Shown here in pieces: positions 9,621-58,134 of a DNA stretch of 64,000 bases (its first letter is position 1; every line of letters starts with the position of its first letter). Source of the DNA: Octopus sinensis (lineage: Eukaryota); assembly GCF_006345805.1 (NCBI RefSeq), contig NC_043016.1, positions 2,852,001-2,916,000 of the forward strand, written 5' to 3'. The translations under genes and the position numbers were made by a program. The notes under the pieces were generated by a model that was not told the DNA's origin, ran no database searches, and saw only the letters and a list, made by a program, of their open reading frames with translations.

Positions 9621-9736
9621 GACGGACATGTTGTCACCTCGACTCCGAAGGTAATCGTTTATTTTGACTATTCATAGCCCATATTTTGTGTACATTTTTG
9701 TAAATAAGGTGTGTAAGGCACCCAACTTTCGTTTGA

Positions 9737-12054
9737 ATGCTTTTTCAAGGCAGGAATTCGCCCCTAGGGTCAGTTTCAACCCTATTTAATTTGCGTATTT
9801 TTCTTCTCGACATTTTTTTAATGTCGAGAAATGTTATTGTAGAACGCTGGTCGCGTTCCTTTATGGACCAGCATTTTCCTAGTCTGGAAACGCTAGGAGA
9901 AAAAAAGAACTTATGCACGACAAAGACAAATCTGAATGACGTGGTAGTGAACGCTGCAACCACTTGCGGTAACAGCCCTGTCACCACCACCACCACTAAC
10001 AACAACAACAACGAGACTACTACTGCTACCACCACAGCCTCCACCACCACCACCACCACCACCACCACCGCCACCTCATCCACTACCTCAACTACCAACA
10101 ACAATAACAATGACAACAAGAATAACAACAATTGCGCCACCATTTCGAAATCTGCTGCCAAGGCTGTCTCTTCTGCCACTGACGCCACCGCCAACACCAA
10201 CAACAAAAACAATAATGACAACAATAACAATTCCGTTCAGACCTTGTTTCCTCCAATACCAAGAACTGAAGGAGATAAACAAAAGACTGTGACAACCAAA
10301 CAAATTGACGAAAGCTGCTCAAACCCAGGAACAAATTATGCAAGTAATTTTCCACCCCTTCCTACTTGCACAATCAAACATCAGACACCAAATACACCAA
10401 TTTTACCAACTGCAGCCAACAACAACATCACTACCAGCAACAACAATAACAAAACAACAACAAATTTCGCCGAGGCGATAAAAAAAAAAAAGACAACAGT
10501 ATATTTTACTGCACAACAGATAAAAGATACCAAAGTTTTAATAACGACAGTAGATGACATGGTAAAAATAAACATACCACAAGAAATATTAGAAAATGAA
10601 AAAAAAGAACTATTATATATAAAATAATTAATAAGAAAACAAAAAGTCCAGAGAAGGCTAACACAAGCAAAATCGAAAAATGCTTGAAACCCATCTGGAA
10701 CTTCAAAGAGTATGTGACCTAGTGGAACACGTTCGCGCATGTACAAGTGGTTTTCCACACTGAAGTGTTAGCAAAACGTTTCTCAACGCTAACTCTTCAT
10801 TCAGGTGAACTCACATTAATACCAAGCTATCGTGGACAGAAAGTGACTAAGATCACTTTAAACAATGTTCCAAAAATAGCGAACAATCTATGGCTAGCAA
10901 CGGCCATAGGTGTGAAAATGGAAGATTTCACAATTTTACAAACTACGGTCACGGAACACAAAAACTGGGTGGGAAAAAGAGTAGAATTTCTACTACACAT
11001 CAACAAGGATGATATCAAGAAAATACCCACCCAGATATGTGTATCAGAAGACCACAAGTTGTATGTGGTCGTCGATGGCAGAAGACCACGTTGCTACATA
11101 TGCGGCAGTGAGCAACATCTAAAAAAAGATTGCAAATCTGCCGCAAGAAAACAACAGCAACAACAACAGCAGCCGGAAAAACAAAAAAGCCAGCTTTACT
11201 ACCCACACCACGTTTTGCACGAACAGGACTAATCACAGAAAATCAACAAAAAGCAAACCTCACAAACCAAACAACCACACCAACTGCACCAAGAACAGAA
11301 ACAACACCAACAACAACAACCAAGATTAAACCAACTCCCAAACCAAGAACATCTACCAAAAAGACAAGCATCGAAAATGAAGAAACAATTACCACTCCAA
11401 ATCCCCACAAAACTGACACCCCAAACAACACAACAATACCCACAATCACTCAAACACAAAATACCCACACCCACCTCCAAAACCCCATACACCACAACCT
11501 AACGCTCACCAACCAACACCAACAACAAAATCAAAACATTCTAAAATAGACCCCAATACTTTTCCCTCCCACTCTCTGATCCCTCAGATTTGTCATTAGA
11601 CGAAGAAGATACAGAAGATTGGCAAATAGCCACAGGGGGGAGAGGAAAAAGGGGGAAAAAAAGAAAAGAAAAGATAACAAACAAAGCAGGAAGATTCACG
11701 ACTCCCGAAACAAAAACATCCACAGAAAACGAACACATCAACACAAACACACCATCATCAAATCCCCCAACAATGTTGACAGCCATAAACACAAACAACC
11801 ACGACCTAATGGAATACATTAGGTCAAACACCAACATAACTGAAAACGACATAAAAACAAATAACCACCCACGCACAACACCACCACAACACATTAAAAT
11901 AATACACGCAACACAGAACACATACAGCACCCTGAAATCTCTTTACCCTGATGCAGTAGGGAGATTTCAAAAATATTCATCAAAGAAACTATATAAAAAC
12001 CTCATGGAAGAAGACTGTGAGGTGAAAAACAAAGGACTTCCGGACAACAAGTAA
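9737..12054 (+). pseudogene. ORF1 (gag-like, single CCHC zinc knuckle), disrupted by stops and frameshifts
   Basis: Fragments 9737-10627, 10747-11232, 11130-11549 and 11590-12054. VVDGRRPRCYICGSEQHLKKDC contains C-x2-C-x4-H-x4-C at 11092-11133. Long T/N-rich low-complexity segments. Confidence 0.8.
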
Positions 12055-12120
12055 CCTTTTCTCTCTCTCTTTCCTTTTTTGCACTTTCTTTTCGTGTGTA
12101 AAACACAATTTTATCGGAAC

Positions 12121-15100
12121 ATGCTCAAAATAGGCAGTATAAATGTACGTGACTTGGGGTCGCCTTGGAAACAAGGCTACCTGTTAAATGACATCAAGTC
12201 ACTAAATCTGAATATCATAGCCATCAGTGAGACCAGACTCCACAGCTCGCGGGCACTCCAGCACATGTTCGGTACACATTTCAACATTTATTTGTCTCCG
12301 TGTCTACCGAGAATGGGCGGAGGTGGCACCGCGGTGCTTCTCCGGAAGAGTCTGGGTCTCAAAGTAAGAGCAATTTTCCTAAACCCGGAGGATAGGCTGG
12401 TCGTTTTGGATTTCGATGGCAGCAATGAGTGTGCTTTTCGACTGATAACAGTTTATGCTCCGTCCTTAACAGGCCGACCAGATTTCTTTCGACGTCTAGA
12501 GTCTTTCATGGGAACGTCTCGTCCTTTACTTTTAGTGGGGGATTAGAATGCCACCCTGGACACGCATCTAGACTACGTGGGCAGTGATAGCAATAGAAGG
12601 GGATGCAAATGCCTCAAAGACCTGCTCAGACGTTTTCAACTGTCTGACAGGTACCGACTGGACCACCCGAATGTGCCAATGTGGACATGGAGTAACCGCA
12701 TAGTGTCGTCCAGATCATACTTAGATAGAGTATTCTGTAGGACAATAGATAAAAATAGTGTAGGTTGTCCACAATTTCATATAGTCAGTTACACATATCA
12801 CAAGTTTGTGACTTGTACACTTGACTTAAATAAGACACATAGGCAGGGTCCTGGTTACTGGAAACTAAACGCGTCTTTTACAGCACGACAGGTTTACCGG
12901 GACCGGATCAGCACATTAGTTAAGAGAGCTTTGACGGGTACCATCATCAACAAAAGATGGTGGTATGCCCTAAAAAAGGCAATTAAAGCAGAATTAGTCA
13001 GATACAGTAAAGCCCTAGCATTAGACCGAAATAGAATAGAGGGAGAATTAGTTAAGGTTTTAGAAGAGGCACTTAGAACTGGCATCGCGTCCAACGTGCT
13101 GGCGGCGAGATTGGCCCTCGACCAACACCTCAACGCCAAACACGAGGGATGCGTTGTCAGAGCTAGGATGCGTGCTCTGAGGAACGAAGGAGTTGGAGCC
13201 GCCCAAGAGGCCCGAGTGGTGGAGACGCAACGAGGCAACAGAGCCACCATCAAGTATCTTACAGATGAACAGGGACGCGAATTGATCGAGCCTAAAAGGA
13301 TGTGTGGGGCTTTTCAACAACACTTCACCCAACTGTTTGAGACAAGTGGTGGGTCAGAACGCAGAGTGGAATTTAGTGCCTACCTGCATGCCTTGCCACG
13401 ACTCTCAGCAAGAGAGGTGGAGTCTTGTGAAAGGCCTATCACAGCTGCGGACGTACATGATGCGATGGAGGGCTGCGCGAGAGACAAGTCACCAGGCTTG
13501 GATGGTCTGCCCTACGAACTTTATTGTCATATGCCAGACTTGTTTGGAGGCATCTTGGCAGCTGTCTACTGCAACTGGCAGCAAAACGGCAGTATTCCTG
13601 CTTTTGTAAAGCGAGGAGCAGTGGCACTGATTAAGAAAGACCCAAACAAGGGGGACGTCATAGATAATTTCAGGCCCATCGCTCTGCTCAACGCAGATTT
13701 GAAAATGTTGGCCAAGAGGTTGGCGCTTGTCAACAAGAAACTAATCGACAAGGCGCAAACATGCGCCGTGCCGGGTAGAAGTATTCATGACAACCTCCAT
13801 CTGATGCGCTACATCATAGACAGGGTAGTTAAGAATCCCACGAGAGCTGGGATGCGGGAGGAGCGTGTCTGCATACGCGGATGACGTCACCGTCATAGTG
13901 TCGAGCTACCAGCACATCGAGCTGGTCGGCGAGACACTAAAAGAATACGAAGCGGTAACGGGAACAAAAATTAACCGGGAAAAGTCAGTGGGCTTGCGGC
14001 TCGGCACCTGGAGAAGCAGGCCCATGCCGTCCAACAGCGTCTCCATCGTGGGACGCTGGACGGACGGACCAGTTAAATTGCTCGGGGTCTGGTTCGGTCC
14101 GGACCTCCAAATGGAGAAGAACTGGGGCGAGATAACGACTAGGGTGGCTACTCTCACCCAGAAATGGGCTGAGAGAAAGCTATCCCTAAAAGGTCGGGTG
14201 GAGGTGGCGAACGTGTACATCGCATCCGTCATCGAGTATCGTCTGACCGTCGTGCCTTGTCCCGACCCTACCATCACCAAACTGGAACGTATACTCTTCC
14301 GCTTCCTGTGGGAGGGAAACGTTCCGATGGTTAGGCGATCCATTTGCTGTCAACACCCGCTAAATGGAGGGCTGGGCATGCCGTGGTTGATGATGCGCAG
14401 ACATGCGCTGAGACTGCGACATCTCCGGCGCTTCATAGACGACGGTGAACAGGTGTGGTCGCCTTTTGTGCGGAGCGCTTTCCCGTAGCTCGTCTCCTTC
14501 GACGAACTACAGTCATGGATCAAGCAGAGACCGAGGCTAGGCGAATGGCACCGCGAGTGTCGCGTTGCTCTTAAGCAACTCTGCCGTCCGGGATCGAACT
14601 TGTGCGACTCCATCACAACAAAGGCATTCTATAGAGGATTAGTGGAGGGGAGGTGCGACGACGAACTCGGGCAGAGTCTGGGCGTCGACGAGGAACACCT
14701 GACCCGCCTGTTCAGGACAACTTTCGGGCCGGGACCTATGAACAATCACCAAAGATCCCTGGCCTGGCAGTGCTATCGAGAAGCATTACCTGTTCGGGAT
14801 AAGCTCTACAGACACGGTTCCAGACACACTGGACCGACTTGCCCGAGATGCGGTCAGAGCGACGAAACCGTTCTGCACGCACTCGTGCAATGTCCAATCA
14901 TTTCAGACCTGTGGGCTTATGCCGAACGGCTGCTGTCACGTGTGGGACGAGTCCGCCTATCGGCCGGGTCTATCGTGAAATTTGCTCCGCCCTCTTCCCT
15001 CAACCGGGAAGGCAAGGCAGTTTTCATTGTACTGGTGGCCATGGTGAAAGAATGTGTGTGGTGGACCCGAGCGAAAGGATTAGAGACAAACACTTACCTC

Positions 15101-15258
15101 TCTGGCCAATCGCTCATCAACTTTTTCAAGTACCACTTGAAAAGGAAGGTGAGAATGGAGAGGGAAGTTTTGTCTCGCGAAAGATTAAAAAAAGATGGGT
15201 GAATGTTGCAAAGATGGTGCGTGCGAGTGACAAAACCATTTTGAGCATGACCCTGTAA
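12121..15258 (+). pseudogene. ORF2 (AP endonuclease, reverse transcriptase, C-terminal Cys domain), disrupted
   Basis: IGSINVR, IAISET, LLLVGD*NATL, WTW, SYLDRVF and GPGYWKLN (APE); SPGLDG, NFRPIALLNAD, HDNL and SAYADD (RT); CPRCGQSDETVLHALVQC. Stop at 12544-12546. The RT segment normally carrying D..KAFD and QG.PLSP is missing at ~13840-13860. Confidence 0.9.
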
Positions 15259-15553
15259 ATTGTAAAAAAGAAAGAGAGAGCATTTTGCTCTCATGTGGTT
15301 ATTTTCCCCCTGACTGAGGTTCCCGTGGTCTTTTCTGTAGGCTTTTCTTCCCACGGATGAACCCAATCTTGTTTTATCAATGTTTTTATCATTATTTCTG
15401 TGATACACGATTTCTTTTCTTTTTTTCCTCCTCTCGATCCCTTTTGATCGCAATCTTACATTTATTTTCTTTTTTTTCCACCCTCAAAAAGAAAAGCTCT
15501 GCATTTGTATTTGTCCCCTCTGTATTCAGCCCTGTGTGGCTAATAAAAGAAAG

Positions 15554-15554
<1 letters not shown>

Positions 15555-20019: not shown

Positions 20020-20056
<37 letters not shown>

Positions 20057-20057
<1 letters not shown>

Positions 20058-23000
20058 TAAAAATAATAGAGATATAGACTTGGATACAGCAATGAACCCT
20101 AATAAATTAGCTAACGTACGAAGATACATTCTCAAAGCCAAAAAAATATCAGAAATAGAAATAGAACATTTAAAAGAAAAAATACACCAGGAAAATGTAG
20201 ATAGAAGCCACACAACAATGCCCAATAATATAAACACTGAAACTGTAAAACACGAAGACAAACGCAACATTCCAACAAACACGATATAAACAACGAAGGG
20301 GAGCCTAATGATTATGATAATATAAAAAATAAAATAATCAAAGAACTGAAAACACAGAGCCCCAAATGGACCACCGACCATACCTCCCAAGAATAAAAAT
20401 AAACGCAATAACAACACCAATTATAAACCACATAAACCTAGCCGTCACTGAACTAGCCACTGAAACAAAAAAAGTGATATCACTGAACTAAATGACTTGA
20501 TATACGCAGCAGCCACTTCAGCCACAAAAGAAGCTGGATACTCACCCAAACCCGCCCAAACAGAGTACCACCACCCAAACAACCCTGTGGATAAATAACA
20601 TCCAAAACAAATTAAAAAAATTAGAAAAGACCTGTCGATTCTTAATGAAATCAGCAAACAAGCGACGCTACTAAGCAACAAAAAGAGAACAAAAATGCTC
20701 CGCAAATATAACATCACAGAAAAAGATTTGCCGGAGATAAAGAAAGCTGAAGCAAGATATCCTTGCCAAAGCTCAAAGGATCCGCCGGTACGAGAAACGC
20801 CAACGCTTCTTTGAACAGAACAAAAAGTTCAACTCCGACCCCAAAAAGTTCTACCAAGAACTGGGCAAAAATAAAAGAAGTCACTGCAGCACCAACGGCA
20901 GAAGAATTGGAAGAATTCTGGAGAGAAATATGGTCGGCGAACGAACAGCCAAAAAAATGGAGTATGAAAATAACAAACTCGGCATCTGAACAACTTTGGA
21001 CCCCCATAACAACTGAAGAGGTCACCCAGACACTGCAAAAACTAAGCAACTGGAAGGCACCTGGGCATGACAAGATCCCCAACTTCTGGTTGAAATATCT
21101 AACAGGAATGCACAAAAGCTGGCTGAAAACTTTAACACATACTAGCAGAGCCAGAGACAATGCCTGAATGGCTCACGAAGGGGAAAACCATCTTAATTCC
21201 CAAATCAAATGAAACAACAAAACCAGAAAACTACAGACCAATAACCTGCCTCCCTACTATGTTCAAGGCATTTACTGCAGTGATATCGCAAAGGCTGAAC
21301 AAGCACCTGGACGAAAACAAATGTTCCCAGAAGAGCAGAAAGGATGCCGCAAGGCTCATATGGCTGTAAAGATCAACTAATGATTAATAAAGCCGTAACT
21401 GAAGACAGCCACAGAAAGAAGAAAGGCCTCACTATGGCCTGGATTGACTACAAAAAGGCGTTTGATAGCATCCCCCACATTTGGATCCTCGAAACACTAG
21501 CCATTAACAAAGTAGCACCAACAATCATAAAATTCATAGAGCACTCTATGAATAAATGGCAAACAGTCCTACACCTCCAAACAAAAGAGGGACTCGTGAA
21601 AACCAAAGACATCCCCATTAGAAGAGGAATATTCCAGGAAGACACGCTCTCTCCACTCCTTTTCTGCTTGGCACTGTCACCTCTACCTGATATGCTAAAT
21701 GGAACTGGATGCGGATATAAATGTTACGGCAAAACGATCAGCCACCTTTTATATATGGATGACCTAAAACTATACGCTGCAAATGACAAACAGCTGGAAA
21801 CACTATTAAAGACAGTTCATGGATTTACCAAAGAAATAGATATGAAATTTGGATTAGAAAAATGCGCCAAAGTAACCATGGAAAGAGGAAAACTAGTTAA
21901 GAGTAACAACCTCACACTAGATAAAACCAATGAAATAAAAGAATTAGACCAAAGCCAAACTTACAAATACTTAGGAATCCATGAACTAGATAAGACACAA
22001 CACACACAATGAAAGAGAAAATAAAAAAGAATATTATAGACGAGTTAGATCAATACTAAAAACAGAGCTCAATGCTAAAACAAGATAATAGGTATCAACA
22101 CTTTAGCTGTCCCAGTTATAAGTTACAGCTACAATATCCTTAACTGGACACGAAATGAACTGTCCAAAATAGATAGGAAAACAAGAAAAATACTGACAGG
22201 ATCTAGGATGCATCACCCAAAATCTGACATAGAAAGACTATATATACAACGTATTGAAGGTGGTAGAGGCCTTATACAGCTGGAAAACTACTATAAAATA
22301 ACTACCATAGGACTGCAAAAATACCTACTTCAGAAGGAAGGAAACTGATCCAGATAGCAGCAAAACACGAGCAAAACAAAAAACTGTTCTCAGTATTTAA
22401 GGAAGCTGACAAATACAAACAAGAAATCATACCACCTAATAAACAAGAAGAAGAAGAAGATGATGAAGAAACAACAAAAGCTATAAACAAATGAAATCCA
22501 AACTAAAAATAGAACAGCAACGAGGCATGATAAAACGATGGCAAGAAAAGCCCCTTCATGGTAAATACTGCACTAAAATAAACGCAAAAGAAATAGACAA
22601 AGAAAAATCCCAGCAATGGTTGAGAAGCTCAGGACTCAAAGCAAAACAGAGGGATTTTTAATTGCAGCACAAGACCAAAGCCTCCCCACCAGAAATTACC
22701 AAAACATGTAATGAAAAGAAATATTACAAGTAACTGCAGAATATGTGGAGATGGACAAGAAACAATAAATCATATTATCTCTAGCTGCCCAGTCCTGGCT
22801 AATAAGGAATATATTCACAGACATGACAGAGTTGGAACCTACATACATTGGAAGCTATGCCAACATTATGGAATAACAACAGAAAAAAGATGGTATAGGC
22901 ACACACCAGAAAAGGTCACAGAAAACGAGAAAGCAACCATACTCTGGGATATGCCGATACACACAGATAGAGAAATTAAGGCCAACAGACCAGATATAGT

Positions 23001-23400
23001 TCTCAGAGATCATGAAGAAAAAATGCTTTCTAATTGATGTATCAATACCGGCAGATGACAACGTTTCTCTAAAAGAAATGGAGAAACTCTCAAAATACAA
23101 AGACCTGGAAATAGAGGTAACTAGAATGTGGAACCTGAAAACAGAAACAATTCCTATCATAGTAGGTGCATTAGGCATGATAAAAAAATATTCAGACAAA
23201 TACATAACAAAAACACCAGGTCTTACAAACACATATAACATACAGAAAATTGCACTATTGGGCACTGCACACATCCTACGCAGAACACTTTCCATACAAT
23301 AACCATCAGAGCATCACAACAAACCACAGCACATACCCAAAGCACACAGAGCTGCGCTCGGTAGTGAAGTGAAAGCACGCTATAAAAATAAAACTACTAA
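20057..23400 (+). mobile_element. 5'-truncated R4/Dong-clade (RLE) non-LTR retrotransposon flanked by (TAA)n; coding disrupted
   Basis: NWKAPGHDKI, ENYRPITCLPT, WIDYKKAFDS, GIFQEDTLSP and HLLYMDD (RT); CRICGDGQETINHIISSC and RHDRV (CCHC); NRPDIV..LIDVSIP..EKLSKY..IIVGALG (PD-(D/E)xK RLE). (TAA)n at 19963-20056 and 23401-23421. Confidence 0.9.
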
Positions 23401-23421
23401 ATAATAATAATAATAATAATA

Positions 23422-24116
23422 ACCACCGTCTTACTTTCAAGTTTTTTTAACCATTTTTTGGGTGGTGTAATGTCCCACTCCACCAACTTTTCGTTCGCCC
23501 CTAGTGGGTAATAAAGAACTTACTCCACCAACTTTTCATTGTTATTTGCCATGTTTTTTTTAAAAGAGTCCAAAAATACAGTTGTTAAAATATGAAATAA
23601 TTAAGGAAAAAGAAGGAAAAGAATAAAGTCCAAACAAAACGAAGGGGAGAGAAAAAAATTAACAGTTCAAAAAAGTTTTTTTTTAATCAAAGATAGAAGA
23701 AGAGAGAGTAACAGTTCAAAACACAGCAAAGGCCACTTGGTACTCCAGGCCAAAATTTAACACAATTGTAAAACAGTTAAAAAATCATTCCAGTTTTCTT
23801 CTAGGTACTCCTTAACAGGAACAACACTATTTTGAAACAAAAATTTTGGCAGGATACGCCCACCAAACCAATAATTTTCACAATTAAGTGAATAATATTT
23901 TCACTCAGCCTTAGGCAGACTAGAGTCTATTGAGGACTTGTTGCTTGTAAAAATAATTTGCGACATACAACAGGTCCCCACTAGACCCCAAAAATTCTTA
24001 CCTTACGGCTGAGTATTCAAAAGTCTTCAATTTAAGATGGCTTTCAAAAACACGTCTTACATCTTCGGTGTCAAACAGAAGTCCAATTCGCACATGTGCA
24101 ATGAGGTAGCAATGAC
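23422..24116 (-). mobile_element. 5' portion (UTR plus ORF1 start) of a Tx1-ORF1-type element, homologous to 38900-40962
   Basis: After removing a 29-bp insertion and one TSD copy, the minus strand from ATG 23552 reads MANNNEKLVEWDITPPKKWLKKLESKTVV, versus SVLEWEINPPKQWLKDMEERTMVV in the 39406 ORF. Both UTRs carry repeated ttttgaact motifs. Confidence 0.8.
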
Positions 24117-24148
24117 GTAAGCTAGCTACTTACCACACAGCCACTCTT
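24117..24148 (-). mobile_element. Isolated 5' head of SINE family B
   Basis: The reverse complement aagagtggctgtgtggtaagtagctagcttac matches the heads at 30981 and 52493. Confidence 0.8.
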
Positions 24149-26299
24149 GTATATGTATTACATGCACTCTCATACTTTATAAAGAGGACAGAGAATAAGC
24201 TACGCACAAGAAGCAAAGTGTGAGGAGAAACAGAGGAAATCGATTCTTTAGATAAGGGAAAAGGAAATAAACTGGGAGTGTAGGTGAAAAATCGTAGACT
24301 GCGGTTTCAGTTTGTATTCTCAAGCTAACGTAGTTACTTGTACGTAATTCCCAGCAATGCTGGAAACTGCAGCTAAGTCACTCCCACACCACATTATTTT
24401 AGATGCAGAAATGATACAGAATTTTTTCAGTCGAAACAATCAAACAAAAGAAAACAACAGTACTGTTTCGGTTGGGATGTTTTTAATAAATCTGTTCAAC
24501 CAGATCGGACATTAGGGCTTATAATTACTGGCTTACAGAGAATAGAGTCTCTCCATGTTGCCTTGACCTGTCAGAAACTGCAGCCAAATTTTCCTTAAAT
24601 GAAAGCATAGCGTCTTGAATAACTTCGACTATATAAGATAATGCAACGAAATTTCTAATGCATAAAAATAGGAAGAAATGTGATGCCCATCTGTGGAAGG
24701 CTTTTAGCTTTAAATAATATATTAACTTTGATCAAGGTGGATCTGGGCTAAACACCAACATCAATATTAATATCAGTAAATTAAAAAACAATATCATCAT
24801 CATCAACAACAATGACTGAATGTCAATCCCATGAAACTTAAAATGTCCCAGCAATGCGTGAATTTTCACCGCCCAGTGTATTCTTCGAAAGTGCAAATCC
24901 ATACGAGAAAATGATGAGCAATAGATGAATGATGTTCTTCGTGAATTTTGCTTTGTGCTTGAAAAATCAGCGTAAAACTTGTTTGAATAACCTACCAAAT
25001 GAAAGTTAAAATCATCGTCGAAATATATAAGCAGATTGGCCAATAAATAGCTTTAAAATCATTCATATATGAATAAAATGGGTTTCCATGGACAATTGTA
25101 TAACAATTGTCATCCTGCGTCTGTAGAGAGGCATTTCGCCAGTAAAATGTTATTTCTCACTCAAATATTAATTTATTGGCCGCAGCCTCAAAGCTGAAAC
25201 ATATAAACGAATAAAAGGATAAAAGGATAATAGATATTGTTTAGATAATGACGATCCATCAAAAGCTTATATATGTTAGCCTAATTTACGAATCCTTTAT
25301 ATAAAAACTGATCTGTGCTATTGGTTGGTTAAGAAATCTGGTCTTATAATTTCTGCACGGAGGAAAATGTAACCATTCTTATGCTTATTTAACCTACAAT
25401 GAGGTCTTGATCTTACATATTTGATATATGCTTTTGTTTAACCTCTTTCAGGCTGCGTATGTTGTTCAAGGAAAGTGCCTTTAAGGGATAAGTGTAACAG
25501 AACGGTAGATATAATTATTTCGTTGTAATTTCAACTCGTCGGTGCCGTCTACTCGTGTCACTTTTGAAACGAATTCCAATCGTGCAGATAGCGTATGCTT
25601 CAGATGGGCAACAGCACCGCACAAGTAAAACTAAATTAAATTTCGAACTAGACACAGATCTCATAATATAAACATTATTGATATCACATATACATCAGAC
25701 CAGCGATTTGAATTCGTCTCGAGGTTGATTCGCCTATTCGATACCGACGAGTTGAAATACGAGCAAAGTATCAACATCTTTCGATATCGTTAATCTACAG
25801 GGCGATTCGTTTCACTTGGTTTGGGGGATATACAGTGCTTTTTAACACTGTACGTCTTAAAGAGATTTTGTCTGGACAACATACTGCATACTATATGTGT
25901 TTAGACAACACGCATACATTAATTTTGAGATATCAATGAAGTTTACATTATTAGAGCTGCTTCTAACTCAACGTTTAAATTTAGGTTTCTCTGATTTACA
26001 ATGTGTTGTAAATAAATAGATTATACATACATGCGTACATACGTGAATACACACATACATACGTACATACATACACAGATACACACACACACACTTTTAA
26101 AGGGTATCCAGGAACAGGAAATATCAACCAAATTTCGGATGCACATAAAGGGACAGAGACGCAGGAAAAGCAGAAAAATGTGATAATTGACACAGACTTT
26201 GTGGAGTTAACACCAAAGATATTATCTGCATTATAAGCAGTGGTCTGCAAATGCCATCCCAGTATTATCTACCGGTATTATCCCGGTATTATCTACCGA

Positions 26300-31386: not shown

Positions 31387-32091
31387 ATATGTATGTATGT
31401 ATCTATGTGTGGATACATCCCTCACCATCATGCCGCCTCCGCCGCCGCCTACACTTCCTACGATCAACCTCTGTGATTCGTTCCTAACTTCTTGCTTCTT
31501 TCACTTCTGCCTCTTTTACTTTTCACTTCATCTCTTCTTCTTTCCCTTTCTATCTTTGGCCCCTAAAAGCGTTTTGCGACTCTATGTAAAACTATAAAGA
31601 AATACATTTGTTTTCTTTACAGCTCAATTACATCGTCCACTGACGGCATATGCTTCTTCTCACACACACACACACTCTCTCTTTTATTATCCTCTCGCTA
31701 TTTCCTTCTCCATTCATACCCCTCCTCCGCCTTCCTATACTTTCACATTCCCCTCCCTTCCCTTCTTTCCGCTCCGCCCTACTCGGCCGCCCGCAGCACG
31801 CTCTTTACCCTCGTCCTTCACCTTTCACCCTGCCCCGTCTCTTCCCTCTTATCGCTACTCTATTTTACTCTTACTCAGACTCATATTCATACATAGGGGC
31901 TGAAATTTAAAATGAAAAGCACTCCGCCCCCCCTTTCTACTTAACCTTTTTCTTTTGTTTTGTTGTAGATTTTCTTTATTTTTCTTTTATCAAATTTATT
32001 AATTTTTTTATCTATTTATTTCCAATTCCTTTCATTTCTCCGGTTCTTTTGAAGATCCACTAAATTATATAGTAAAACAGAATGCCTATAT

Positions 32092-32170
<79 letters not shown>

Positions 32171-32622
32171 TGATAGATGGATATATAGATAGATAGATAG
32201 ATAGATATAGATAGATAGACACATACATATATATAGATGTGTGTGTGTGTGTGTGTGATGGTATGAATGTCTGTATATCTATGTATGTGTATCTGCGTGT
32301 GTATGTGAGTATGTATGTGTGTCTGTATATTCCACATACGTGTTTATGTTATAACCTAATTGTCTTAAAAGTACCCTGGATATGACACGAATAACAAACA
32401 TCATTTTACATCCTATATTATTTACATCCATAGATATTAACAACAAGGTGATTTTCGCAAAATAGTATTTATTCTCTTTTGTTTGATTTTACCTTTATTC
32501 CTCTTCATATTCTTTTTATAGAGATTTACATTTGCTTTTATTTCTACAATTTTACTCTAATTTATTTATTCTCTGATATGTGAGTCAGAAACAGAAAATA
32601 ACTTTTTCAGAAAGGGCGAGTT

Positions 32623-33842
32623 GCACTTCTCAGGGTACCTTCACATTTCTTTGCACTTCTCAGGGTACCTTCACATTTCTTTGCACTTCTCAGCGTACCT
32701 TCACATTTCTTTGCAGTTTTCAGCGTACCTTCACATTTCTTTGCACTTCTCAGCGTACCTTCACATTTCTTTGCACTTCTCAGCGTACCTTCACATTTCT
32801 TTGCACTTCTCAGCGTACCTTCACATTTCTTTGCACTTCTCAGCGTACCTTCACCTTTCTTTGCACTTCTCAGCGTACCTTCACCTTTCTTTGCACTTCT
32901 CAGCGTACCTTCACATTTCTTTGCACTTCTCAGCGTACCTTCACATTTCTTTGCACTTCTCAGCGTACCTTCACCTTTCTTTGCACTTCTCAGCGTACCT
33001 TCACATTTCTTTGTACTTCTCAGCGTACCTTCACATTTCTTTGCACTTCTCAGCGTACCTTCACATTTCTTTGCACTTCTCAGCGTACCTTCACCTTTCT
33101 TTGCACTTCTCAGCGTACCTTCACATTTCTTTGCACTTCTCAGCGTACCTTCACATTTCTTTGCACTTCTCAGCGTACCTCACATTTCTTTCTTTGCACT
33201 TCTCAGCGTACCTTCACATTTCTTTGCACTTCTCAGCGTACCTTCACATTTCTTTGCACTTCTCAGCGTACCTTCACATTTCTTTGCACTTCTCAGCGTA
33301 CCTTCACATTTCTTTGCACTTCTCAGCGTACCTTCACATTCTTTGCACTTCTCAGCGTACCTTCACATTTCTTTGCACTTCTCAGCGTACCTTCACATTT
33401 CTTTGCACTTCTCAGCGTACCTTCACATTTCTTTGCACTTCTCAGCGTACCTTCACATTTCTTTGCACTTCTCAGCGTACCTTCACATTTCTTTGCACTT
33501 CTCAGCGTACCTTCACATTTCTTTGCACTTCTCAGCGTACCTTCACATTTCTTTGCACTTCTCAGCGTACCTTCACATTTCTTTGCACTTCTCAGCGTAC
33601 CTTCACCTTTCTTTGCACTTCTCAGCGTACCTTCACATTTCTTTGCACTTCTCAGCGTACCTTCACATTTCTTTGCACTTCTCAGCGTACCTTCACATTT
33701 CTTTGCACTTCTCAGCGTACCTTCACCTTTCTTTGCACTTCTCAGCGTACCTTCACATTTCTTTGCACTTCTCAGCGTACCTTCACATTTCTTTGCACTT
33801 CTCAGCGTACCTTCACATTTCTTTGCACTTCTCAGCGTACCT
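32623..33842. repeat. 30-bp minisatellite (ttgcacttctcagcgtaccttcacatttct), ~41 copies
   Basis: Exact 30-nt periodicity with rare variants (tcacct, cagggt) and two small indels. Confidence 0.97.
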
Positions 33843-34856
33843 CAGAGGAAGAGACAAGTTAAGTGAGGGAAAAAAGACGAAAAAGGGAATGGGAGAGAAA
33901 GAAAGCTGTGTTCGACGTCTTTTTGGTGTCCTGTACACATATATGCGTGTATATGTACATGTAGAGGTAGGTACGTACATATATGTTTATATATATGCAT
34001 ATGTTCTATTTTATTAACATATTATACGACTAAACGCACGCACCCTATTAAGTAAGATTGTTCTGCTTATCAAGTTAGCCTTGATATTAACTCTCACGCG
34101 ACTCTGCATCTTTCTTTCTTTCTCTCCCATTCCCTTTTTCGTCTTTTTTCCCTCACTTAACTTGTCTCTTCCTCTCTCTCTCTCCCCCTCACCGTTCTTC
34201 ATGGTCTCCTCGCACCATTCCCCTTCTTCTCTCTCTTCCTCTTGCTCCTCCTCCCCCATTCCCGTCGTCCATCTGCGACGATACTTCCGTCGTAACTGCT
34301 ATCCTGTCTTTTCTCGCCCGCCTTCTAAGGCTACTGGTCGACTTTCTTTCTCTCTCGTCGTCCACTATAATCCAGCGTTTGCAATACTTTTTTCGTCTGG
34401 CGTTAACAGCCCTTCTTATCTTGTTCTCCTTGTCCTGTCTCTCACTGTTATATATTTATTTTTCCACTGTTTATATATATATTTTTTTACTGTTTATATG
34501 TTTGTACTGTCGTTACCGTCTTGCTTTTTTTACCCCTCTGCGAAAAGATCTCAGAATTTTAATTGATTTGCTTTTCGCAGGAAGGAAGTTTTCTTCGAAG
34601 TATACGTCTCGCTTTTATCCTTCGAAACGTTTAGTAGATGAAACCTTAGCGACTGAAGAAGGGGATTTTTCGTTGTGCTTATTGTCCTGTATCTCTTTTT
34701 TTGCTTGTCTTGTTCCTTGGTTTGTGTCTATGTTTTTCGTCTCTCTATGTGTTCGACGTCTTTTTGGTGTCCTGTACACATATATGCGTGTATATGTACA
34801 TGTAGAGGTAGGTACGTACATATATGTTTATATATATGCATATGTTCTATTTTATT

Positions 34857-36744: not shown

Positions 36745-36946
36745 GTTATCTCAACACACTTCTTATGAAGTGTCTTGCCAATTTCAGGAACTTGATCTTC
36801 TATATAGCACAATGCAATACAGAGTTGTCGCAATCTTCCGTTGTGGTTCACTATGGAAGACCATCTAACGCAGAGGTGACAAATAGCCACCATAATAACA
36901 AGTATGTTCGAACAAATGATATTAAGTTTATTATAATTTCTGTTTA

Positions 36947-36960
36947 TTGTTATTATTATT

Positions 36961-36991
<31 letters not shown>

Positions 36992-37009
36992 CTGTTGTTG
37001 TTGTTGTCG

Positions 37010-37079
<70 letters not shown>

Positions 37080-37093
37080 CATTATTATTATCA

Positions 37094-37136
<43 letters not shown>

Positions 37137-37170
37137 CATTATTATTATTATTATTTTATTATTATTATTA
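36947..37170. repeat. (TTA)n/(TTG)n microsatellite
   Basis: Seen directly. Confidence 0.95.
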
Positions 37171-38459
37171 GACAGTACGATAGAGGTGGACAAGACGCAA
37201 GTATGTTTATATTGTGAGAGATGATAGAGAAAGATATAAAAGATTTTATTACTTGAATTGAGAGTTGAGTTATGTTTCAGACGTCAGTAAAACGAGTAAA
37301 AAATTGTAAGCAAGTTTGTCTATTTTAGATTTTCCAAATTCAAGCCACGGGTTTGTTAATTTAGAATCTTAGCTATTGTTTGCATAAATAACAACCAAAT
37401 ATTTTCCAGAATGATGATCCACTAAAGACAAATATGTTAATCAACAGCCTTTAAACCTACCAACATATTCTTGTGAACTAGTTTGCTTAAATTCTCCTTG
37501 TTAGTATCACTGCTATATATTTAAGTGATAACTAACAATCTTAAAGTATAGACAGGTCGTTTCCCTACCATCTTGCCATCACAACTTACAGCTTGATTAA
37601 TATTCATCAGAAGTCAGATTAGCCAAGGAAATGTTAACTGAGAGTATATAAAGCTGAAATGAACTTAAATTATTTATAGTCTTGTAATGGCTTAGCAGGC
37701 CGAAACTTCGAGGTCACTTGCATGATGCCAAGTTACATAGAAAATGAATGAAATACTAATTCCATGATTGAGGATTTGAACAATTACTTCTCCTAAAAGG
37801 AGTTTGCCACAAGTTCTCATAGAATGATACATCATATCATTCTATTGGAGTTAGATAGGCAGCGATGTTCCTTAAAAACATATGGAGGGTGGTCCGTTTT
37901 TTACGAGAACCATTAGATTGGTGTCACCTCAAATACTAAGATCCAAACCCTACTGTTGTGCACAACTACAGATACTACACCACAAGAGTGTTTGTACTGC
38001 AACGCCGATCTTCGCACTAAAATTCGCTTCTCTCCAGGCTAATGAATCTTGAAGAGTACTTCTAGAGAAGTTCACATCGATCAGTCAGAGTGAAACCATT
38101 AATAGTAGATCAGGAGACTCTTGGCAGTGAACCAACTTAAGTAGACATCAAGTATTCAGGACAGAAGTGTGCCGTTTCTATTCGTTAATTGGTGCCTTAA
38201 TAGTGGAAGAAACTAAATACACTTGGCTATATTAGGACTAAAGGGTAAGAAAAATATAACTTGTCTTAGAGCGGAGGAGGAGGAAGAGAAGGGGAATGAA
38301 ACAGTAAATCTACAGGAACTAAAGAGATTCAGTTGTCACGGGTGGGAGTAATACAGTTTTACGTTTATGAATTTGTTTTGCAAGATTTCTGATGTAAAAT
38401 CGTGTGAAAATTACTATTCAGCAACAGTACTTTGGAGTAAAGACTGTTTTCCAAAATAA

Positions 38460-38862: not shown

Positions 38863-38899
38863 GGCGCAGGAGTGGTTGTGTGGTAAGAAGCTTGCTTAC
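38863..38899 (+). mobile_element. 5' part of a SINE-B copy split by the 38900-40962 insertion
   Basis: ggcgcaggagtggttgtgtggtaagaagcttgcttac; the SINE resumes at 40963. Confidence 0.85.
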
Positions 38900-40962
38900 T
38901 TCCGGTTACCCAGAATGCAACACTAGTTGATCTGGACTGTTACAGTGAGAAGACGTTAGTTTCGGCTCCGTGAATAGAAAAAAGAGCAAAAAGAAAAATT
39001 GTCAATTATGGCTCGCTATAGCGAGCAAAAATATTGTTCTCATTACCATAACGGTGAATTGAGAATTTTTGCTTCAAAATTCTTTGGTCTGCCTTTTTTT
39101 CGCCAAATAATTTGTAAATTCTAGTGGGCATATCTCGCTAGAAAAAGTGGACAAGAATAACCCAGACTATTGGATTACCTGTTGGAGTATTATACAAAGT
39201 ATTCCCTGTCTGTTCGATTTGTGAGGTTTTTATTTTATTTTTCCCTTCTATTTTTTCTTTCTTTCTAAATTTTGGTTCATTCTTTTCATTCTTTTAATTT
39301 CAGTTTCCTTTTCTTCCCTTTTATTTTGTTTTACTTCTATTTTTATTCGGTTTTAATTTTTTGGCGGACTGTTTTTTGAACTACTTTTGAACTGTTTTTT
39401 TGGACATGGCAGAGAAGGAACTTCAAAAGAAGAACTCAGTCTTGGAATGGGAAATTAACCCGCCTAAGCAGTGGTTAAAAGATATGGAGGAGAGGACTAT
39501 GGTGGTTAGAACTTATTCTAAAGTTCTTGATTCCATCACCGTCTTCCCAAAACCAGTTATAGAAAATGAGCTGAAAGACTATTTGTCCTCTGTGAAATAC
39601 ATATCCTGTGGTGTCAAACATGCAACCGTATGGTTGCTGTTTGACAACCGGGAAAAGGCTCGCACATTTGCGAGTCAGCCTTTCGAGGGCAACGAAATTC
39701 TCTTCCTCTCGTTGTACTGCAGGAGAAAATTAATAAGAGCCTGGATATGTGGGTTGCCCCCAGGCACCGAGATGGGTTGGATTGAAGATACCATCCGACG
39801 GGGACTGGGGGATGGCGGACCCAGGCTCTTAAATGTATTGCCGGCGGTCGATTGGAAAGGGTCAAAAGCGATTTTGACCCTTTGGACCCCATCGGCCGCA
39901 ACAGATCTGGTTTTTACAGATTTTTAAAAAATGGCAGGATGCATGTATCCGGTGATACTTGAGGGACGTCCCCCCAAGTGTCACTCATGCCTGAAGCCAG
40001 TCACATTACAAATAACTGCCCCCAGGACCATGGTAAGGTCCTGGAACATTCACTCCTACCCGGTCAAAGTGAGAGGTGGATGTGGTTGAGCCTCCTCAAC
40101 TCAAAAAGGATTAAAAAGGAAGAAGGCGGGCAACAATAGTTGCCTGCCGAAGGACTCTACGGCTTCGGGAGGTGGGGGATAGACTCCGGACAAAGCGGAA
40201 GAGTTCCACTCTCCCGAAGTCTGGAAGAAAAGAAAAAAAGAAAGAAGAACGGGTCATCGCAGTGGGGGAGATTATGTGCTGTCTGCATGTCCCGAAGTTG
40301 TTCCACCCACGGGGGAAGAAACGACCCCACCCCATAAAGATGATGAATTAATTATCTTTTTCTACAAGGGCGGGGAGGTGGAAAAATAGTAGAAGAACAT
40401 AATGAGGCAGTAGATATGCCCTTCACACGGGATCCCGAATGGCCTCCGCAGATAGCTGTGGAGGTCATAAGGTTGCCCTTGTGGGAAAGGCTTAAAGGAT
40501 TTGGGGAGGAGTGTCGCATATGGCCGGGTGGCCCTTACACGACTTACATGTCTTACATGAGTGAGGCATGGGAAATAGCGGGATACAGGAACTCAAGCGG
40601 CAATGAAGATAATGATGAATATATCGATGGATATATCGATGAGTAGGAGGTGAAAAGCCTCGTTATAGGGTTTGAAACTTCATCTTATTGTATTATTTGT
40701 AATGGTTTATAACCTCAATTGTGTGTTTAAAAAAAAAAAAACAAAGAAAGAGGTTTTAGTGCCTCCTTCTTGTAAGAGGTTTGAAACCTCATATTGATTT
40801 TTAAAAAAAAGAAAATATGTTTTCGAGAAAAATCCAATCGGCGGGTGTTGGGTTTCGTCTCTCATTTATTCATTCTATTTCATTTTCATTCATTAATGTG
40901 TTTGTCACGCCCGCAAAGCTACACAATCTTTGTACTGTCTATATGACAAATTTTATGAAATA
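38900..40962 (+). mobile_element. ORF1-only (half-L1-like) non-autonomous retroelement, 2063 bp, with a 15-bp TSD
   Basis: TSD aagaagcttgcttac (38885-38899) / aagtagcttgcttac (40963-40977). Contains an ORF1 homologue and ends in gaaataaa. No APE or RT motifs seen. Confidence 0.8.
39406..40020 (+). pseudogene. gag-like ORF1 with a CCHC knuckle (stop at 39925-39927, frameshift at ~40000)
   Basis: FDNREKARTF..DWKGSKAIL..YPVILEGRPPKCHSCLKP(G)HITNNC aligns with FHTEVLAKRF..NWVGKRVEF..YVVVDGRRPRCYICGSEQHLKKDC of the 10747 ORF1 fragment. Confidence 0.8.
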
Positions 40963-41111
40963 AAGTAGCTTGCTTACCGACCACATGGTTCCGAGTTCAG
41001 TTCCACTGCGTGGCACCTTGGGCAAGTGTCTTCTACTATAGCCCCGCGCCGACCAAAGCCTTGTGAGTGGATTTGGTAAACGGAAAATGAAAGAAGCCCG
41101 TCGTATATATG

Positions 41112-41150
<39 letters not shown>

Positions 41151-41364
41151 TTGTGTATGTGCTTGTGTCTGTGTTTGTCCCCCTAACATCGCTTGACAAC
41201 CGATGTTGGTGTGTTTACGTCCACGTAACTTAGAGGTCCAGCAAAAGCGACCGATAGAATAAGGCTTCCAAAGAATAAGTCCTGGGGTCGATTTGCTCGA
41301 CTAAAGGCGGTGCTCCAGCATGGCCGCAGTCAAATTACTGACACAAGTAAAAGAGTAAAAGAGA
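40963..41364 (+). mobile_element. 3' remainder of the split SINE-B
   Basis: Continues cgaccacatggttccgagttcagttccactgcgtggcacc through to gtaaaagagtaaaagag. Confidence 0.9.
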
Positions 41365-41671
41365 GTAATAAACAAGTGTAGAAAGATCATATAGTGCGTG
41401 TGCATATTTGGTAAAAAAAATATGACTCTCCCGAAACATCACAAATAAAATTGTTTGATACTAATGAAGTTTTCTGGGAGGAATATAATGTTGCCTTTAC
41501 TTAATGTTCATACATGTTGTGTTGGCTATGGTATATACGGGGTTACGGGTAGATGATTCTTCGATAACTGAATTCGGAAGTTGCGCAATCGTATTAATTT
41601 AGCTAGTTGCATGTTAGTACAGTTACTCTGACGATAAAAACAACGTCACTATTTTGGCTGCTACTTTAGTC

Positions 41672-52663: not shown

Positions 52664-52694
<31 letters not shown>

Positions 52695-58088: not shown

Positions 58089-58134
58089 TATATATATAGG
58101 TGTGTGTGGATATATACGTATATACATATATATA

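What the first reader, a model, noticed from the sequence alone, without database searches (positions are those of the whole stretch)
38863..40977. Tx1-type elements that appear to target the tRNA-like head of a SINE at one exact nucleotide
Seen: a SINE-B copy is split after gcttgcttac (38899) by a 2063-bp element with a 14/15 TSD, and the SINE resumes at 40963. A second SINE-B head (24117-24148, minus) is cut after the same gcttac and joined to a homologous element. The two elements share ORF1 protein motifs (EW[DE]I[TN]PPK.WLK..E..T.VV) but their 5' UTRs show no alignment I can see beyond short ttttgaact motifs, which argues for two independent insertions rather than a duplication. Established: Tx1-clade LINEs are often sequence-specific (U2 snRNA, tRNA arrays, microsatellites, other transposons). 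Inference: a retroelement family uses an abundant SINE as its landing pad, inserting between the A and B boxes and so probably disabling the SINE promoter.
Basis: partly seen in the sequence, partly recalled or inferred. Interest (0 to 1): 0.88.

Follow-up and report, generated by a model that had tools for sequence, protein, structure and literature searches.

The report
ORF1-only retroelement that lands in a SINE
An octopus 2-kb retroelement that has kept a LINE's first gene and lost its reverse transcriptase gene sits at the same nucleotide of a tRNA-like SINE in all four copies I could find in two genomes, so it probably inserts site-specifically into another transposon, a known behaviour with a new target.

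Summary
At 38863-41386 a ~435-bp SINE is split after ...GCTTGCTTAC by a 2063-bp insert (38900-40962). The insert is flanked by a 15-bp duplication of SINE sequence (14/15 identical), and the SINE then continues to its normal end. A second SINE head (24117-24149, minus strand) is joined at the same nucleotide to a homologous element.

I found two more copies in Octopus sinensis (L001, L002). Both are preceded by a SINE head that ends at the same position. The outer flanks are unrelated and the junction details differ.

The element is not itself a Tx1 LINE, because it has no ORF2. It consists of a 5'UTR, a complete LINE-type ORF1 (two RRM-like domains, a CCHC knuckle and a C-terminal domain) and a 3'UTR without a poly(A) tail.

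Its ORF1 is distantly related to ORF1 of L1/Tx1-like LINEs that have APE, RT and zf-RVT domains. In the same window and in O. sinensis these LINEs sit inside (ATCT)n and (ATT)n microsatellites.

Best reading, confidence about 0.6: a non-autonomous, ORF1-only derivative is mobilised by an unidentified target-specific L1/Tx1-type partner that cuts the SINE between its A and B boxes.

Weaknesses: there are only four copies, the 3' junction is visible in one, and no partner was found. Tx1 elements that target other transposons are already known, so this is a new target and a new variant, not a new principle.

The parts
38863..38899 (+). 5' part (nt 1-37) of the host SINE-B copy, containing the box A-like motif. 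Its last 15 nt (38885-38899) are the upstream copy of the target-site duplication.
   Evidence: Aligns with the heads of intact SINE copies at 30981 and 52498.
38900..40962 (+). el1: the complete 2063-bp ORF1-only retroelement. It consists of a 5'UTR, a decayed ORF1 and a 3'UTR, with no ORF2 and no poly(A) tail.
   Evidence: Bounded by a 14/15 duplication of SINE sequence. No RT or endonuclease domain was found.
38900..39405 (+). el1 5'UTR (506 bp). It is not alignable with the 5'UTRs of the other three copies.
39406..40260 (+). el1 ORF1 core: an N-terminal LEWEI.PPKQWLK motif, two RRM-like domains, a CCHC knuckle (about 39979-40019) and a basic tail. It is decayed, with a stop at 39925-39927 and a 1-nt deletion near 39999.
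   Evidence: 63% aa identity to P0001. tblastn covers the whole length of P0001. The AlphaFold model of P0001 shows two RRM-like folds, and Foldseek matches tandem-RRM proteins. The zf-CCHC match is weak.
40267..40646 (+). Second conserved coding stretch (..ACPE..DDELIIFFYKGGEVEK..DPEWPPQIAVEV..LK..WPG). It is probably the C-terminal domain of ORF1p.
   Evidence: 45-57% aa identity between el1 and the L002 copy. It aligns at motif level with the C-terminal region of ORF1p of autonomous relatives. No Pfam family matched.
40647..40962 (+). el1 3'UTR. It has an internal ~45-bp duplication (40697-40741 and 40770-40815) and ends ...TTTTATGAAATA, directly abutting AAGT of the target.
   Evidence: The alignment to the 3' ends of related LINEs is weak.
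40963..41386 (+). The rest of the host SINE-B copy (nt 23 to the end). It contains the downstream duplication copy (40963-40977), the box B-like motif, the internal (TA/TG)n run and the 3' tail.
   Evidence: Aligns along its whole length with copies at 30981, 52498 and 57741.
24117..24149 (-). Head of a second SINE-B copy, ending ...GCTAGCTTAC at the same position.
23421..24116 (-). el2: the 5' 696 bp of a second element. It holds a 5'UTR homologous to the O. sinensis copies and the first ~20 codons of ORF1. It has 13 extra nt at the junction, including a TCATTGC direct repeat.
20046..23420 (+). R2/R4(Dong)-like LINE with an (AAT)n tail that truncates el2. It is not part of the element family.
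   Evidence: RVT_1 domain. Best PDB matches are R2 proteins, 8.8e-19. Sequence.
9622..15554 (+). Autonomous L1/Tx1-like LINE inside an (ATCT)n microsatellite. Its ORF1 is the in-window distant relative of the el ORF1. It ends ...GGCTAATAAAAGAAAGTT without a poly(A) tail.
   Evidence: tblastn E = 1.4e-9. Pfam finds Exo_endo_phos, RVT_1, zf-RVT and zf-CCHC. Best PDB match is human L1 ORF2p, 1.8e-32.

Best explanation
el is a non-autonomous LINE derivative that kept the 5'UTR, the whole ORF1 and the 3'UTR and lost ORF2.

ORF1 encodes an RNA-binding protein with two RRM-like domains, a CCHC knuckle and a C-terminal domain.

I infer that el is copied by target-primed reverse transcription, using the ORF2 protein of a related L1/Tx1-type LINE that I did not find. 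I also infer that this partner's endonuclease is sequence-specific for the head of one SINE family.

Proposed steps, all inferred from the anatomy of copy 1:
- The bottom strand is nicked between SINE nt 22 and 23 (bottom strand 5'-CTACTT^ACCAC).
- The element RNA, which ends ...AAUA(AAGU), is reverse-transcribed from that nick.
- The top strand is cut between nt 37 and 38 (GCTTAC^CGACC).
- Repair leaves a 15-bp duplication.

The insert always has the SINE's orientation. It separates the box A-like and box B-like motifs by 2 kb, which should silence that SINE copy. That last point is also inferred.
For: Shown:
- Copy 1 is a textbook insertion: the SINE is otherwise complete and carries a 15-bp duplication.
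- All four known copies, in the window genome and in O. sinensis, carry a SINE head ending at the same position and in the same orientation: el1 GCTTAC|TTCCGG, el2 GCTTAC|GTCATTGC.., L001 GCTTCC|TGTGCATG, L002 GCTTCC|ACTGCGCATG.
- The 500 bp upstream of the four heads are unrelated, so these are not segmental duplicates.
- The element side of the junction differs between copies. el2 has 13 extra nt, and L001 and L002 differ by 2 nt. This is what separate integration events would give.
- The heads carry different SINE variants. AAG[A/T]AG and TT[A/C]C occur in all four combinations. The same variants occur in an unrelated SINE copy, L010:8889-8950.
- Head similarity does not follow element relatedness.
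- The host SINE of el1 is 90-93% identical to other copies. The el1 ORF1 DNA is only 65-71% identical to the other copies. So el1 entered a SINE that is younger than the split between the element lineages.
- Relatives are target-specific. The L1/Tx1-like LINEs whose ORF1 is homologous sit inside (ATCT)n and (ATT)n. They also form head-to-tail arrays.

From the literature:
- Tx1-clade LINEs are known to target other transposons, microsatellites and small-RNA genes (PMC4494074).
- L1-Tx1 families are recently active in Octopus vulgaris (PMC13282606).
Against: - Only four copies could be retrieved, and no genome-wide count was possible.
- The 3' junction with the SINE remainder is visible only in el1. 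No SINE remainder lies downstream of el2, L001 or L002. All three are 3'-incomplete, so this is uninformative rather than contradictory.
- In target-primed reverse transcription the 3' junction is normally the precise one. Here the evidence is mostly from 5' junctions.
- L001 and L002 share two head variants (C at nt 9, and TTCC). Partial inheritance of the head within that sublineage is therefore not excluded. In that case the independent events could be as few as two.
- No ORF2-bearing partner with the same flanks was found.
- The 3' end of el1 resembles the 3' ends of the related LINEs only weakly.
- Clade assignment by RT phylogeny was not possible.
Confidence: 0.6

Rival explanations
1. 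One ancestral insertion into a SINE, after which the first 37 nt of the SINE became the 5' end of the element by 5' transduction. Later copies carry the head wherever they land, so there is no target specificity.
For: - Three of the four copies show only the head and no downstream SINE.
- L001 and L002 share head variants.
- Every head starts at SINE nt 1.
Against: - el1 is followed by the rest of the same SINE with a 15-bp duplication. Under this model, an element already carrying a head would have to land by chance at the matching nucleotide of a SINE (p <= about 4e-4).
- The host SINE of el1 is younger (90-93% identical to other copies) than the split of el1 from the other copies (65-71% identity).
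- The heads are 68-84% identical with no indels, while the adjacent 5'UTR is unalignable (el1) or about 70% identical with many indels.
- The two variant sites occur in all four combinations among the four heads.
- A transcript that starts exactly at SINE nt 1 implies Pol III. The el1 sense strand has 28 runs of T>=4, the first only 167 nt in.
Confidence: 0.15
2. The reverse transcriptase switches template at the 5' end of the element RNA onto a SINE RNA fragment that ends in the anticodon-loop equivalent, like a tRNA half. This would add a 37-nt head to each new copy independently of the DNA target.
For: - Tx1-mobilised elements repeatedly gain small-RNA sequence at their 5' ends (SINEU, PMC4494074).
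- There are extra or variable nucleotides at the head-element junction.
- SINE nt 37 corresponds to about tRNA position 34.
- Three copies lack a downstream SINE.
Against: It cannot explain el1, where the same SINE continues after the element with a 15-bp overlap. No independent evidence exists for such RNA fragments.
Confidence: 0.08
3. A single SINE copy that had received the insert was then retrotransposed as a 2.5-kb unit through the SINE's own 3' tail. All copies would then descend from one insertion event.
For: The head, the orientation and the junction position are the same in all copies. The outer flanks are unrelated, as retrotransposed copies would be.
Against: - No copy other than el1 keeps any SINE 3' part.
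- The element-side junctions differ.
- The heads carry different subfamily variants.
- A transcript from SINE nt 1 through 2 kb containing 28 T-runs is unlikely for Pol III.
Confidence: 0.07
4. Chance: the element inserts at random and the SINE is simply abundant.
For: SINEs make up 11.6% of an octopus genome (PMC13282606). The window alone has four to five copies of this SINE.
Against: Same nucleotide (+/-1 to 2) and same orientation in 4 of 4 copies. The probability per additional event is <= about 4e-4.
Confidence: 0.01

Closest known systems
Tx1-clade target-specific non-LTR retrotransposons: Tx1L in the Tx1D DNA transposon, Tx1-Mar in Mariner-N4_AMi, Kibi/Koshi in microsatellites, Keno in U2 snRNA genes (Kojima 2015, PMC4494074, and references in it)
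   Same: - Recurrent insertion at one sequence position in one orientation.
- The target is another repeat.
- The 3' end has no poly(A) tail.
- Relatives in the same genome sit in microsatellites and in tandem arrays.
- Those relatives have the APE + RT + C-terminal zinc-binding architecture.
   Different: - The element itself has no ORF2.
- The target is a tRNA-like SINE, cut between boxes A and B. I found no report of this target in the papers searched.
- Clade membership by RT phylogeny is untested.
HAL1 ('half-L1') elements of mammals (Bao and Jurka 2010, recalled from memory; mentioned in PMC5753468)
   Same: A LINE derivative that keeps ORF1 and lacks ORF2. It is presumed to be mobilised in trans and persists as its own lineage.
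   Different: HAL1 is not target-specific and has L1-type poly(A) ends. Its ORF1p is the coiled-coil/RRM/CTD type, whereas this ORF1p has tandem RRM-like domains plus a CCHC knuckle.
SINEU elements mobilised by Tx1-Mar in crocodilians (PMC4494074)
   Same: Non-autonomous elements that share the target preference of a Tx1 partner and carry small-RNA-derived sequence at their 5' ends.
   Different: SINEU elements are short and non-coding, and their snRNA heads are part of the element. Here the SINE sequence is most simply the target, and the element encodes a full ORF1p.
R2/R4/Dong and R1-type site-specific LINEs
   Same: Precise, orientation-specific insertion into a multicopy sequence. One such element, R2/R4-like with an (AAT)n tail, is in the window and cuts copy 2.
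   Different: They use a restriction-like endonuclease (R2/R4) or belong to another clade (R1). They have no ORF1 homology to el.

Membership tests
Tx1 clade of the L1 group (target-specific non-LTR retrotransposons) | ORF2 with an APE-type endonuclease and a reverse transcriptase. | tested here: not met
   No such domain or ORF lies in 38900-40962 or in the L001 and L002 copies. The feature is present in the distant in-window relative at 9622-15554.
Tx1 clade of the L1 group (target-specific non-LTR retrotransposons) | RT domain groups with Tx1 rather than L1 in a phylogeny (RTclass1-type test). | not testable with these tools
   No reference RT set was available and el has no RT. The relative's ORF2 matches human L1 ORF2p best among solved structures (1.8e-32). 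That only places it in the L1 group.
Tx1 clade of the L1 group (target-specific non-LTR retrotransposons) | Copies recurrently flanked by one target sequence, at one position and in one orientation. | tested here: met
   4 of 4 5' junctions fall at SINE nt 37. 1 of 1 readable 3' junctions falls at nt 23, with a 15-bp duplication. The sample is small.
Tx1 clade of the L1 group (target-specific non-LTR retrotransposons) | ORF1 homologous to ORF1 of members of the group. | tested here: inconclusive
   - 22% identity, E = 1.4e-9, to ORF1 of the window's L1/Tx1-like LINE.
- The profile search finds 43 octopus ORF1-type proteins.
- None of these relatives is itself proven to be Tx1 clade.
ORF1-only ('half-LINE', HAL1-like) non-autonomous LINE derivative | A complete unit bounded by a target duplication that encodes ORF1 but not ORF2. 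| tested here: met
   el1 is 2063 bp with a 14/15 duplication. ORF1 and its C-terminal domain are present and nothing else is coding.
ORF1-only ('half-LINE', HAL1-like) non-autonomous LINE derivative | Shares 5' and 3' ends with an autonomous parent. | tested here: inconclusive
   No parent was found. The 3' end resembles related LINE ends only in the ..TTGT..AATAAA.. motif.
LINE ORF1p with RRM plus CCHC knuckle ('type I' of Khazina and Weichenrieder 2009, recalled from memory) | RRM fold followed by a CX2CX3GHX4C knuckle. | tested here: met
   - The AlphaFold model of P0001 (mean pLDDT 78) has two beta-alpha-beta-beta-alpha-beta domains.
- Foldseek gives tandem-RRM proteins, probability 1.0.
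- The knuckle is visible in the sequence. The Pfam zf-CCHC match is below its cut-off.
tRNA-derived SINE (SINE2), the host element | Internal box A and box B in a tRNA-related head. | tested here: inconclusive
   Box A matches 10/11 and box B 9/11 by eye, at tRNA-like spacing. ARAGORN and Rfam (down to E = 10) find no tRNA.
tRNA-derived SINE (SINE2), the host element | Dispersed copies with common ends and their own flanks. | tested here: met
   Copies are in the window (30981, 52498, 57741, 38863/40963), in L002 (three), in L011 (two) and in L010.

The most novel reading that the evidence does not exclude
An ORF2-less, ORF1-only retroelement lineage has persisted across octopus speciation. 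It integrates at a single nucleotide in the anticodon-loop equivalent of a tRNA-derived SINE, using the very large number of SINE copies as a safe landing pad and inactivating each copy it hits. This implies an undescribed SINE-specific L1/Tx1-type endonuclease in cephalopods.
Probability: 0.5. Interest if true: 0.6.

Novelty: new variant of a known kind. Interest (0 to 1): 0.5.

Why it matters
Target-specific LINEs are the natural models for programmable, RNA-templated DNA insertion.

Known Tx1-type targets are DNA transposons, LTR elements, microsatellites and small-RNA genes. A SINE as target would add a case in which one retroelement parasitises the sequence of another, and probably disables it.

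It would also point to an endonuclease with a defined 15-bp staggered cut in a 40-nt tRNA-like sequence. That can be tested in vitro.

For octopus genomics, SINEs and LINEs each make up about 12% of the genome (PMC13282606). Such nesting rules affect repeat annotation and age estimates. The principle itself is already established, so the gain is incremental.

Tried and rejected
- **Protein searches for more family members.** The single ORF1 sequence, a 46-aa N-terminal piece and a 4-sequence profile returned only P0001.
- **Exhaustive profile search.** It gave 43 hits, but only P0001 and P0007 belong to the family.
- **DNA searches of the ~250 kb of octopus sequence fetched.** No further copies.
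- **The missing part of copy 2.** I looked for it and its SINE remainder below 23421. Neither is there. The sequence beyond the R2/R4-like LINE is a mariner remnant and unrelated DNA.
- **Downstream duplications or SINE remainders in L001 and L002.** None found. The SINE tail piece at L001:20705-20773 is an unrelated 5'-truncated fragment.
- **Pfam on the el1 ORFs.** No family matched.
- **Is the post-CCHC coding stretch an ORF2 remnant?** There is no similarity to ORF2 of related LINEs. It fits the ORF1p C-terminal domain instead.
- **Segmental duplication.** Rejected because the outer flanks are unrelated.
- **Logan contigs carrying distant ORF1 relatives (L003-L009).** They show no SINE head. 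L003 runs into the start of an APE ORF2, so it is an autonomous family, not el.
- **Not attempted.** Scans of the metagenome, viral and prokaryote collections, because they do not hold cephalopod genomes.
Full report
**What is in the window**

The window is octopus DNA. The only close protein match of the element's ORF1 is Octopus sinensis LOC115225585 (P0001, 63% identity). All distant relatives come from Octopus species.

It has a head with a box A-like motif (TGGCTGTGTGG, 10/11) and a box B-like motif (GGTTCAGTCCC, 9/11). It then has a body, an internal (TA/TG)n run, and a 3' part ending ...GTAAAAGAGTAAAAGA.

Intact copies lie at 30981-31415 and 52498-52935, and a partial copy at 57741-58110. 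ARAGORN and Rfam do not recognise the head as a tRNA. 'tRNA-like' therefore rests on the box motifs alone.

**Check of the observation**

At 38863-38899 the first 37 nt of a SINE copy end in ...GCTTGCTTAC. A 2063-bp insert follows (38900-40962). From 40963 the same SINE continues to its normal end near 41386.

The 15 nt before the insert (aagAagcttgcttac) are repeated after it (aagTagcttgcttac). All other SINE copies have T at the mismatch position.

The element ends ...TTTTATGAAATA and abuts AAGT. The exact 3' boundary and the duplication length (11-15 nt) are therefore uncertain by four bases.

On the minus strand at 24149-24117 a second SINE head ends ...GCTAGCTTAC. It is joined to 696 bp of an element whose ORF1 begins MANNNEKLVE..VEWDITPPKKWLKKLESKTVV. 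That element is cut at 23420 by the (AAT)n tail of a plus-strand LINE. The RT of that LINE matches R2 proteins best. The rest of copy 2 is not in the window.

**What the element is**

el1 has four parts:
- a 506-bp 5'UTR;
- an ORF1 that aligns with the whole of P0001 but carries a stop (39925) and a 1-nt deletion in the zinc knuckle;
- a further conserved coding stretch (40267-40646);
- a 316-bp 3'UTR.

No reverse transcriptase or endonuclease is present in el1 or in the O. sinensis copies.

An AlphaFold model of P0001, built on a 29-sequence alignment, has mean pLDDT 78. It shows two RRM-like domains (residues 27-98 and 104-182) followed by the CX2CX3GHX4C knuckle. Foldseek returns tandem-RRM proteins.

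The stretch after the knuckle is 45-57% identical at the protein level between el1 and the L002 copy. At motif level (..EL..F/Y .. PP .. LK .. F/Y/W-P-x-D) it aligns with the C-terminal region of the longer ORF1 proteins of autonomous relatives. That alignment is weak, so this reading is an inference.

The element is therefore a LINE that has kept its ends and its whole ORF1 and has lost ORF2. It is comparable in layout to mammalian HAL1.

**Relatives**

tblastn with P0001 finds a distant ORF1 homologue at 10732-11133 (22% identity, E = 1.4e-9). It belongs to a LINE at 9622-15554 with Exo_endo_phos, RVT_1 and zf-RVT domains. That LINE's ORF2 matches human L1 ORF2p best among solved structures (1.8e-32).

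This LINE lies inside an (ATCT)n microsatellite and ends ...GGCTAATAAAAGAAAGTT with no poly(A) tail.

Other related LINEs behave similarly:
- A related LINE in O. sinensis (L010, protein P0002) lies inside (ATT)n.
- A further related LINE in O. vulgaris forms a head-to-tail array with a 5273-bp period at 99% identity (L011).
- The same kind of array occurs in O. sinensis (L012).

These behaviours are typical of target-specific Tx1-type LINEs, which are known to target microsatellites, small-RNA genes and other transposons (PMC4494074). A recent annotation lists 13 recently active L1-Tx1 families in O. vulgaris (PMC13282606).

I could not run the RT phylogeny that defines the clade. 'L1/Tx1-like' is as far as the evidence goes.

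**More copies**

An exhaustive profile search found only two family members in protein databases, P0001 and P0007. Both could be placed on O. sinensis chromosomes.

- In L001 the head GGCTGAGGCATGGCTGTGTGGTAAGTAGCTTGCTTCC (9453-9489) is followed by TGTGCATGCG..., a 5'UTR, and the intact ORF1 at 10001-10846.
- In L002 the head GGCGCAGGCGTTGCCGTGTGGTAAGAAGTTTGCTTCC (15704-15740) is followed by ACTGCGCATGTGCG..., a 5'UTR, and a decayed ORF1 at 16438.
- Their 5'UTRs align with that of copy 2 at about 70%, and not with that of el1.

All four known copies, in at least two genomes, therefore have a SINE head ending at the same position in the same orientation.

**One event or several?**

Evidence for several events:
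- The 500 bp upstream of the four heads share nothing. The L001 and L002 flanks share nothing with the window. Segmental duplication is excluded.
- The element side of the junction differs. Relative to L002, el2 has 13 extra nucleotides with a TCATTGC repeat, and L001 lacks two.
- The heads differ at sites that are polymorphic among ordinary SINE copies. AAG[A/T]AG and TT[A/C]C occur in all four combinations in the four heads. An unrelated SINE copy, L010:8889-8950, carries AAGAAGCTTGCTTC.
- Head similarity does not follow element relatedness. The el1 head is closer to those of L001 and L002 than the el2 head is.
- The host SINE of el1 is 90-93% identical to other copies. The el1 ORF1 DNA is only 65-71% identical to the other copies. 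So el1 entered a SINE younger than the split of the element lineages, yet at the same nucleotide.

Even if the el2, L001 and L002 heads were inherited from one event, two independent hits at one nucleotide have a chance probability of about 4e-4. That uses the 11.6% genome share of all SINEs as an upper bound.

**Weak points**

- Only el1 shows the 3' junction.
- No SINE remainder lies downstream of el2, L001 or L002.
- Each of these three is 3'-incomplete. el2 keeps 696 bp. L001 stops at the equivalent of el1 position ~1490. The L002 3'UTR cannot be delimited. They say nothing either way.
- The precise junction expected from target-primed reverse transcription is therefore documented only once.
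- L001 and L002 share two head variants, so partial inheritance or co-transcription of upstream target sequence remains possible.
- All six young intact SINE copies examined have GCTTGTTTACCAACC. The four element-associated heads have GCTTGCTT (the L002 head begins GTTT instead of GCTT). This could reflect endonuclease preference, the age of the targeted subfamily, or descent.

**Rivals**

- A head acquired once and carried along, a template switch onto a SINE RNA fragment, and retrotransposition of a SINE-plus-insert unit each explain the three head-only copies.
- None of them explains el1 without a coincidence of about 4e-4 (p <= about 4e-4).
- The two that need a transcript starting at SINE nt 1 face 28 Pol III terminator-like T-runs in el1.

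**Verdict**

The site-specific reading is the best supported (about 0.6).

The label needs correcting. The element is an ORF1-only non-autonomous relative of L1/Tx1-like LINEs, not a Tx1 LINE. Its autonomous partner is unknown.

Targeting of other transposons by this kind of LINE is established. The new points are the target, a tRNA-like SINE cut between its promoter boxes, and the ORF2-less passenger.

Noticed in passing
window 9622-15554 (+), flanks 9440-9621 and 15555-15790: A full-length but decayed L1/Tx1-like LINE (ORF1 with CCHC, APE, RT, zf-RVT) sits inside an (ATCT)n/(GTCT)n microsatellite. It ends ...AATAAAAGAAAGTT with no poly(A) tail. It looks like a microsatellite-specific LINE.
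   Followed up: partly
L010 about 9776-15347 (O. sinensis CM016872.1): A related LINE, whose ORF1 is P0002, is flanked on both sides by (ATT)n. This is a second microsatellite-specific member with a different repeat target.
   Followed up: partly
L011 4438-19184 (O. vulgaris OX597840.1); L012 5713-19915 (O. sinensis): Head-to-tail tandem arrays of a related LINE. The period is 5273 bp and the units are 99% identical in L011. Each unit ends ...GGGTAATAATAAAAAACA and is joined directly to the next unit's CCCGAYAGGACG start. The L011 array runs into an assembly gap.
   Followed up: partly
window 19945-23420 (+): An R2/R4(Dong)-like LINE with an (AAT)n tail has inserted into the ORF1 of copy 2. 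The RT matches R2 proteins, and there is a CCHC plus RHD..RPD..D restriction-like endonuclease motif. Upstream there is a solo (AAT)n followed by GACCACC and another (AAT)n. This looks like two successive insertions that share the ACCACC target duplication.
   Followed up: partly
window 18400-19100 (+): A remnant of a mariner-type transposase reading frame with many stops (..HDNA..H.. / ..PPYSPDL..-like).
   Followed up: no
window 40697-40741 and 40770-40815: A ~45-bp imperfect direct repeat (GGTTTGAAAC.TCAT...A-run) inside the el1 3'UTR.
   Followed up: no
window 32580-33866; 17000-18366; 36900-37200: A long minisatellite with a ~30-bp period (32580-33866), a (TGTATGTA)-like array (17000-18366), and (TAT/TGC)n runs (36900-37200). 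These create long spurious ORFs.
   Followed up: no
SINE heads in the window, L002, L010 and L011: The SINE family has at least three head variants: GCTTGTTTACCAACC (the young copies), GCTTGCTTACCGACC (the host of el1) and AAGAAGCTTGCTTCTCAACC (L010). All element-associated heads belong to the GCTT types and none to the young GTTT type.
   Followed up: partly
L002 10001-36638 (gene model P0007): The RefSeq model 'K02A2.6-like' is a chimera. It joins the element's 5'UTR and first 46 ORF1 codons to integrase exons of an LTR retrotransposon further downstream.
   Followed up: no
L003 1860-1930 (Logan SRR11869391): A contig with a distant ORF1 relative (P0005) runs into the start of an APE-type ORF2 (MSICLGCLNVKGLRSNWKQGRFLN). 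This shows that autonomous members of the ORF1 superfamily are present, and perhaps expressed, in another cephalopod data set.
   Followed up: no
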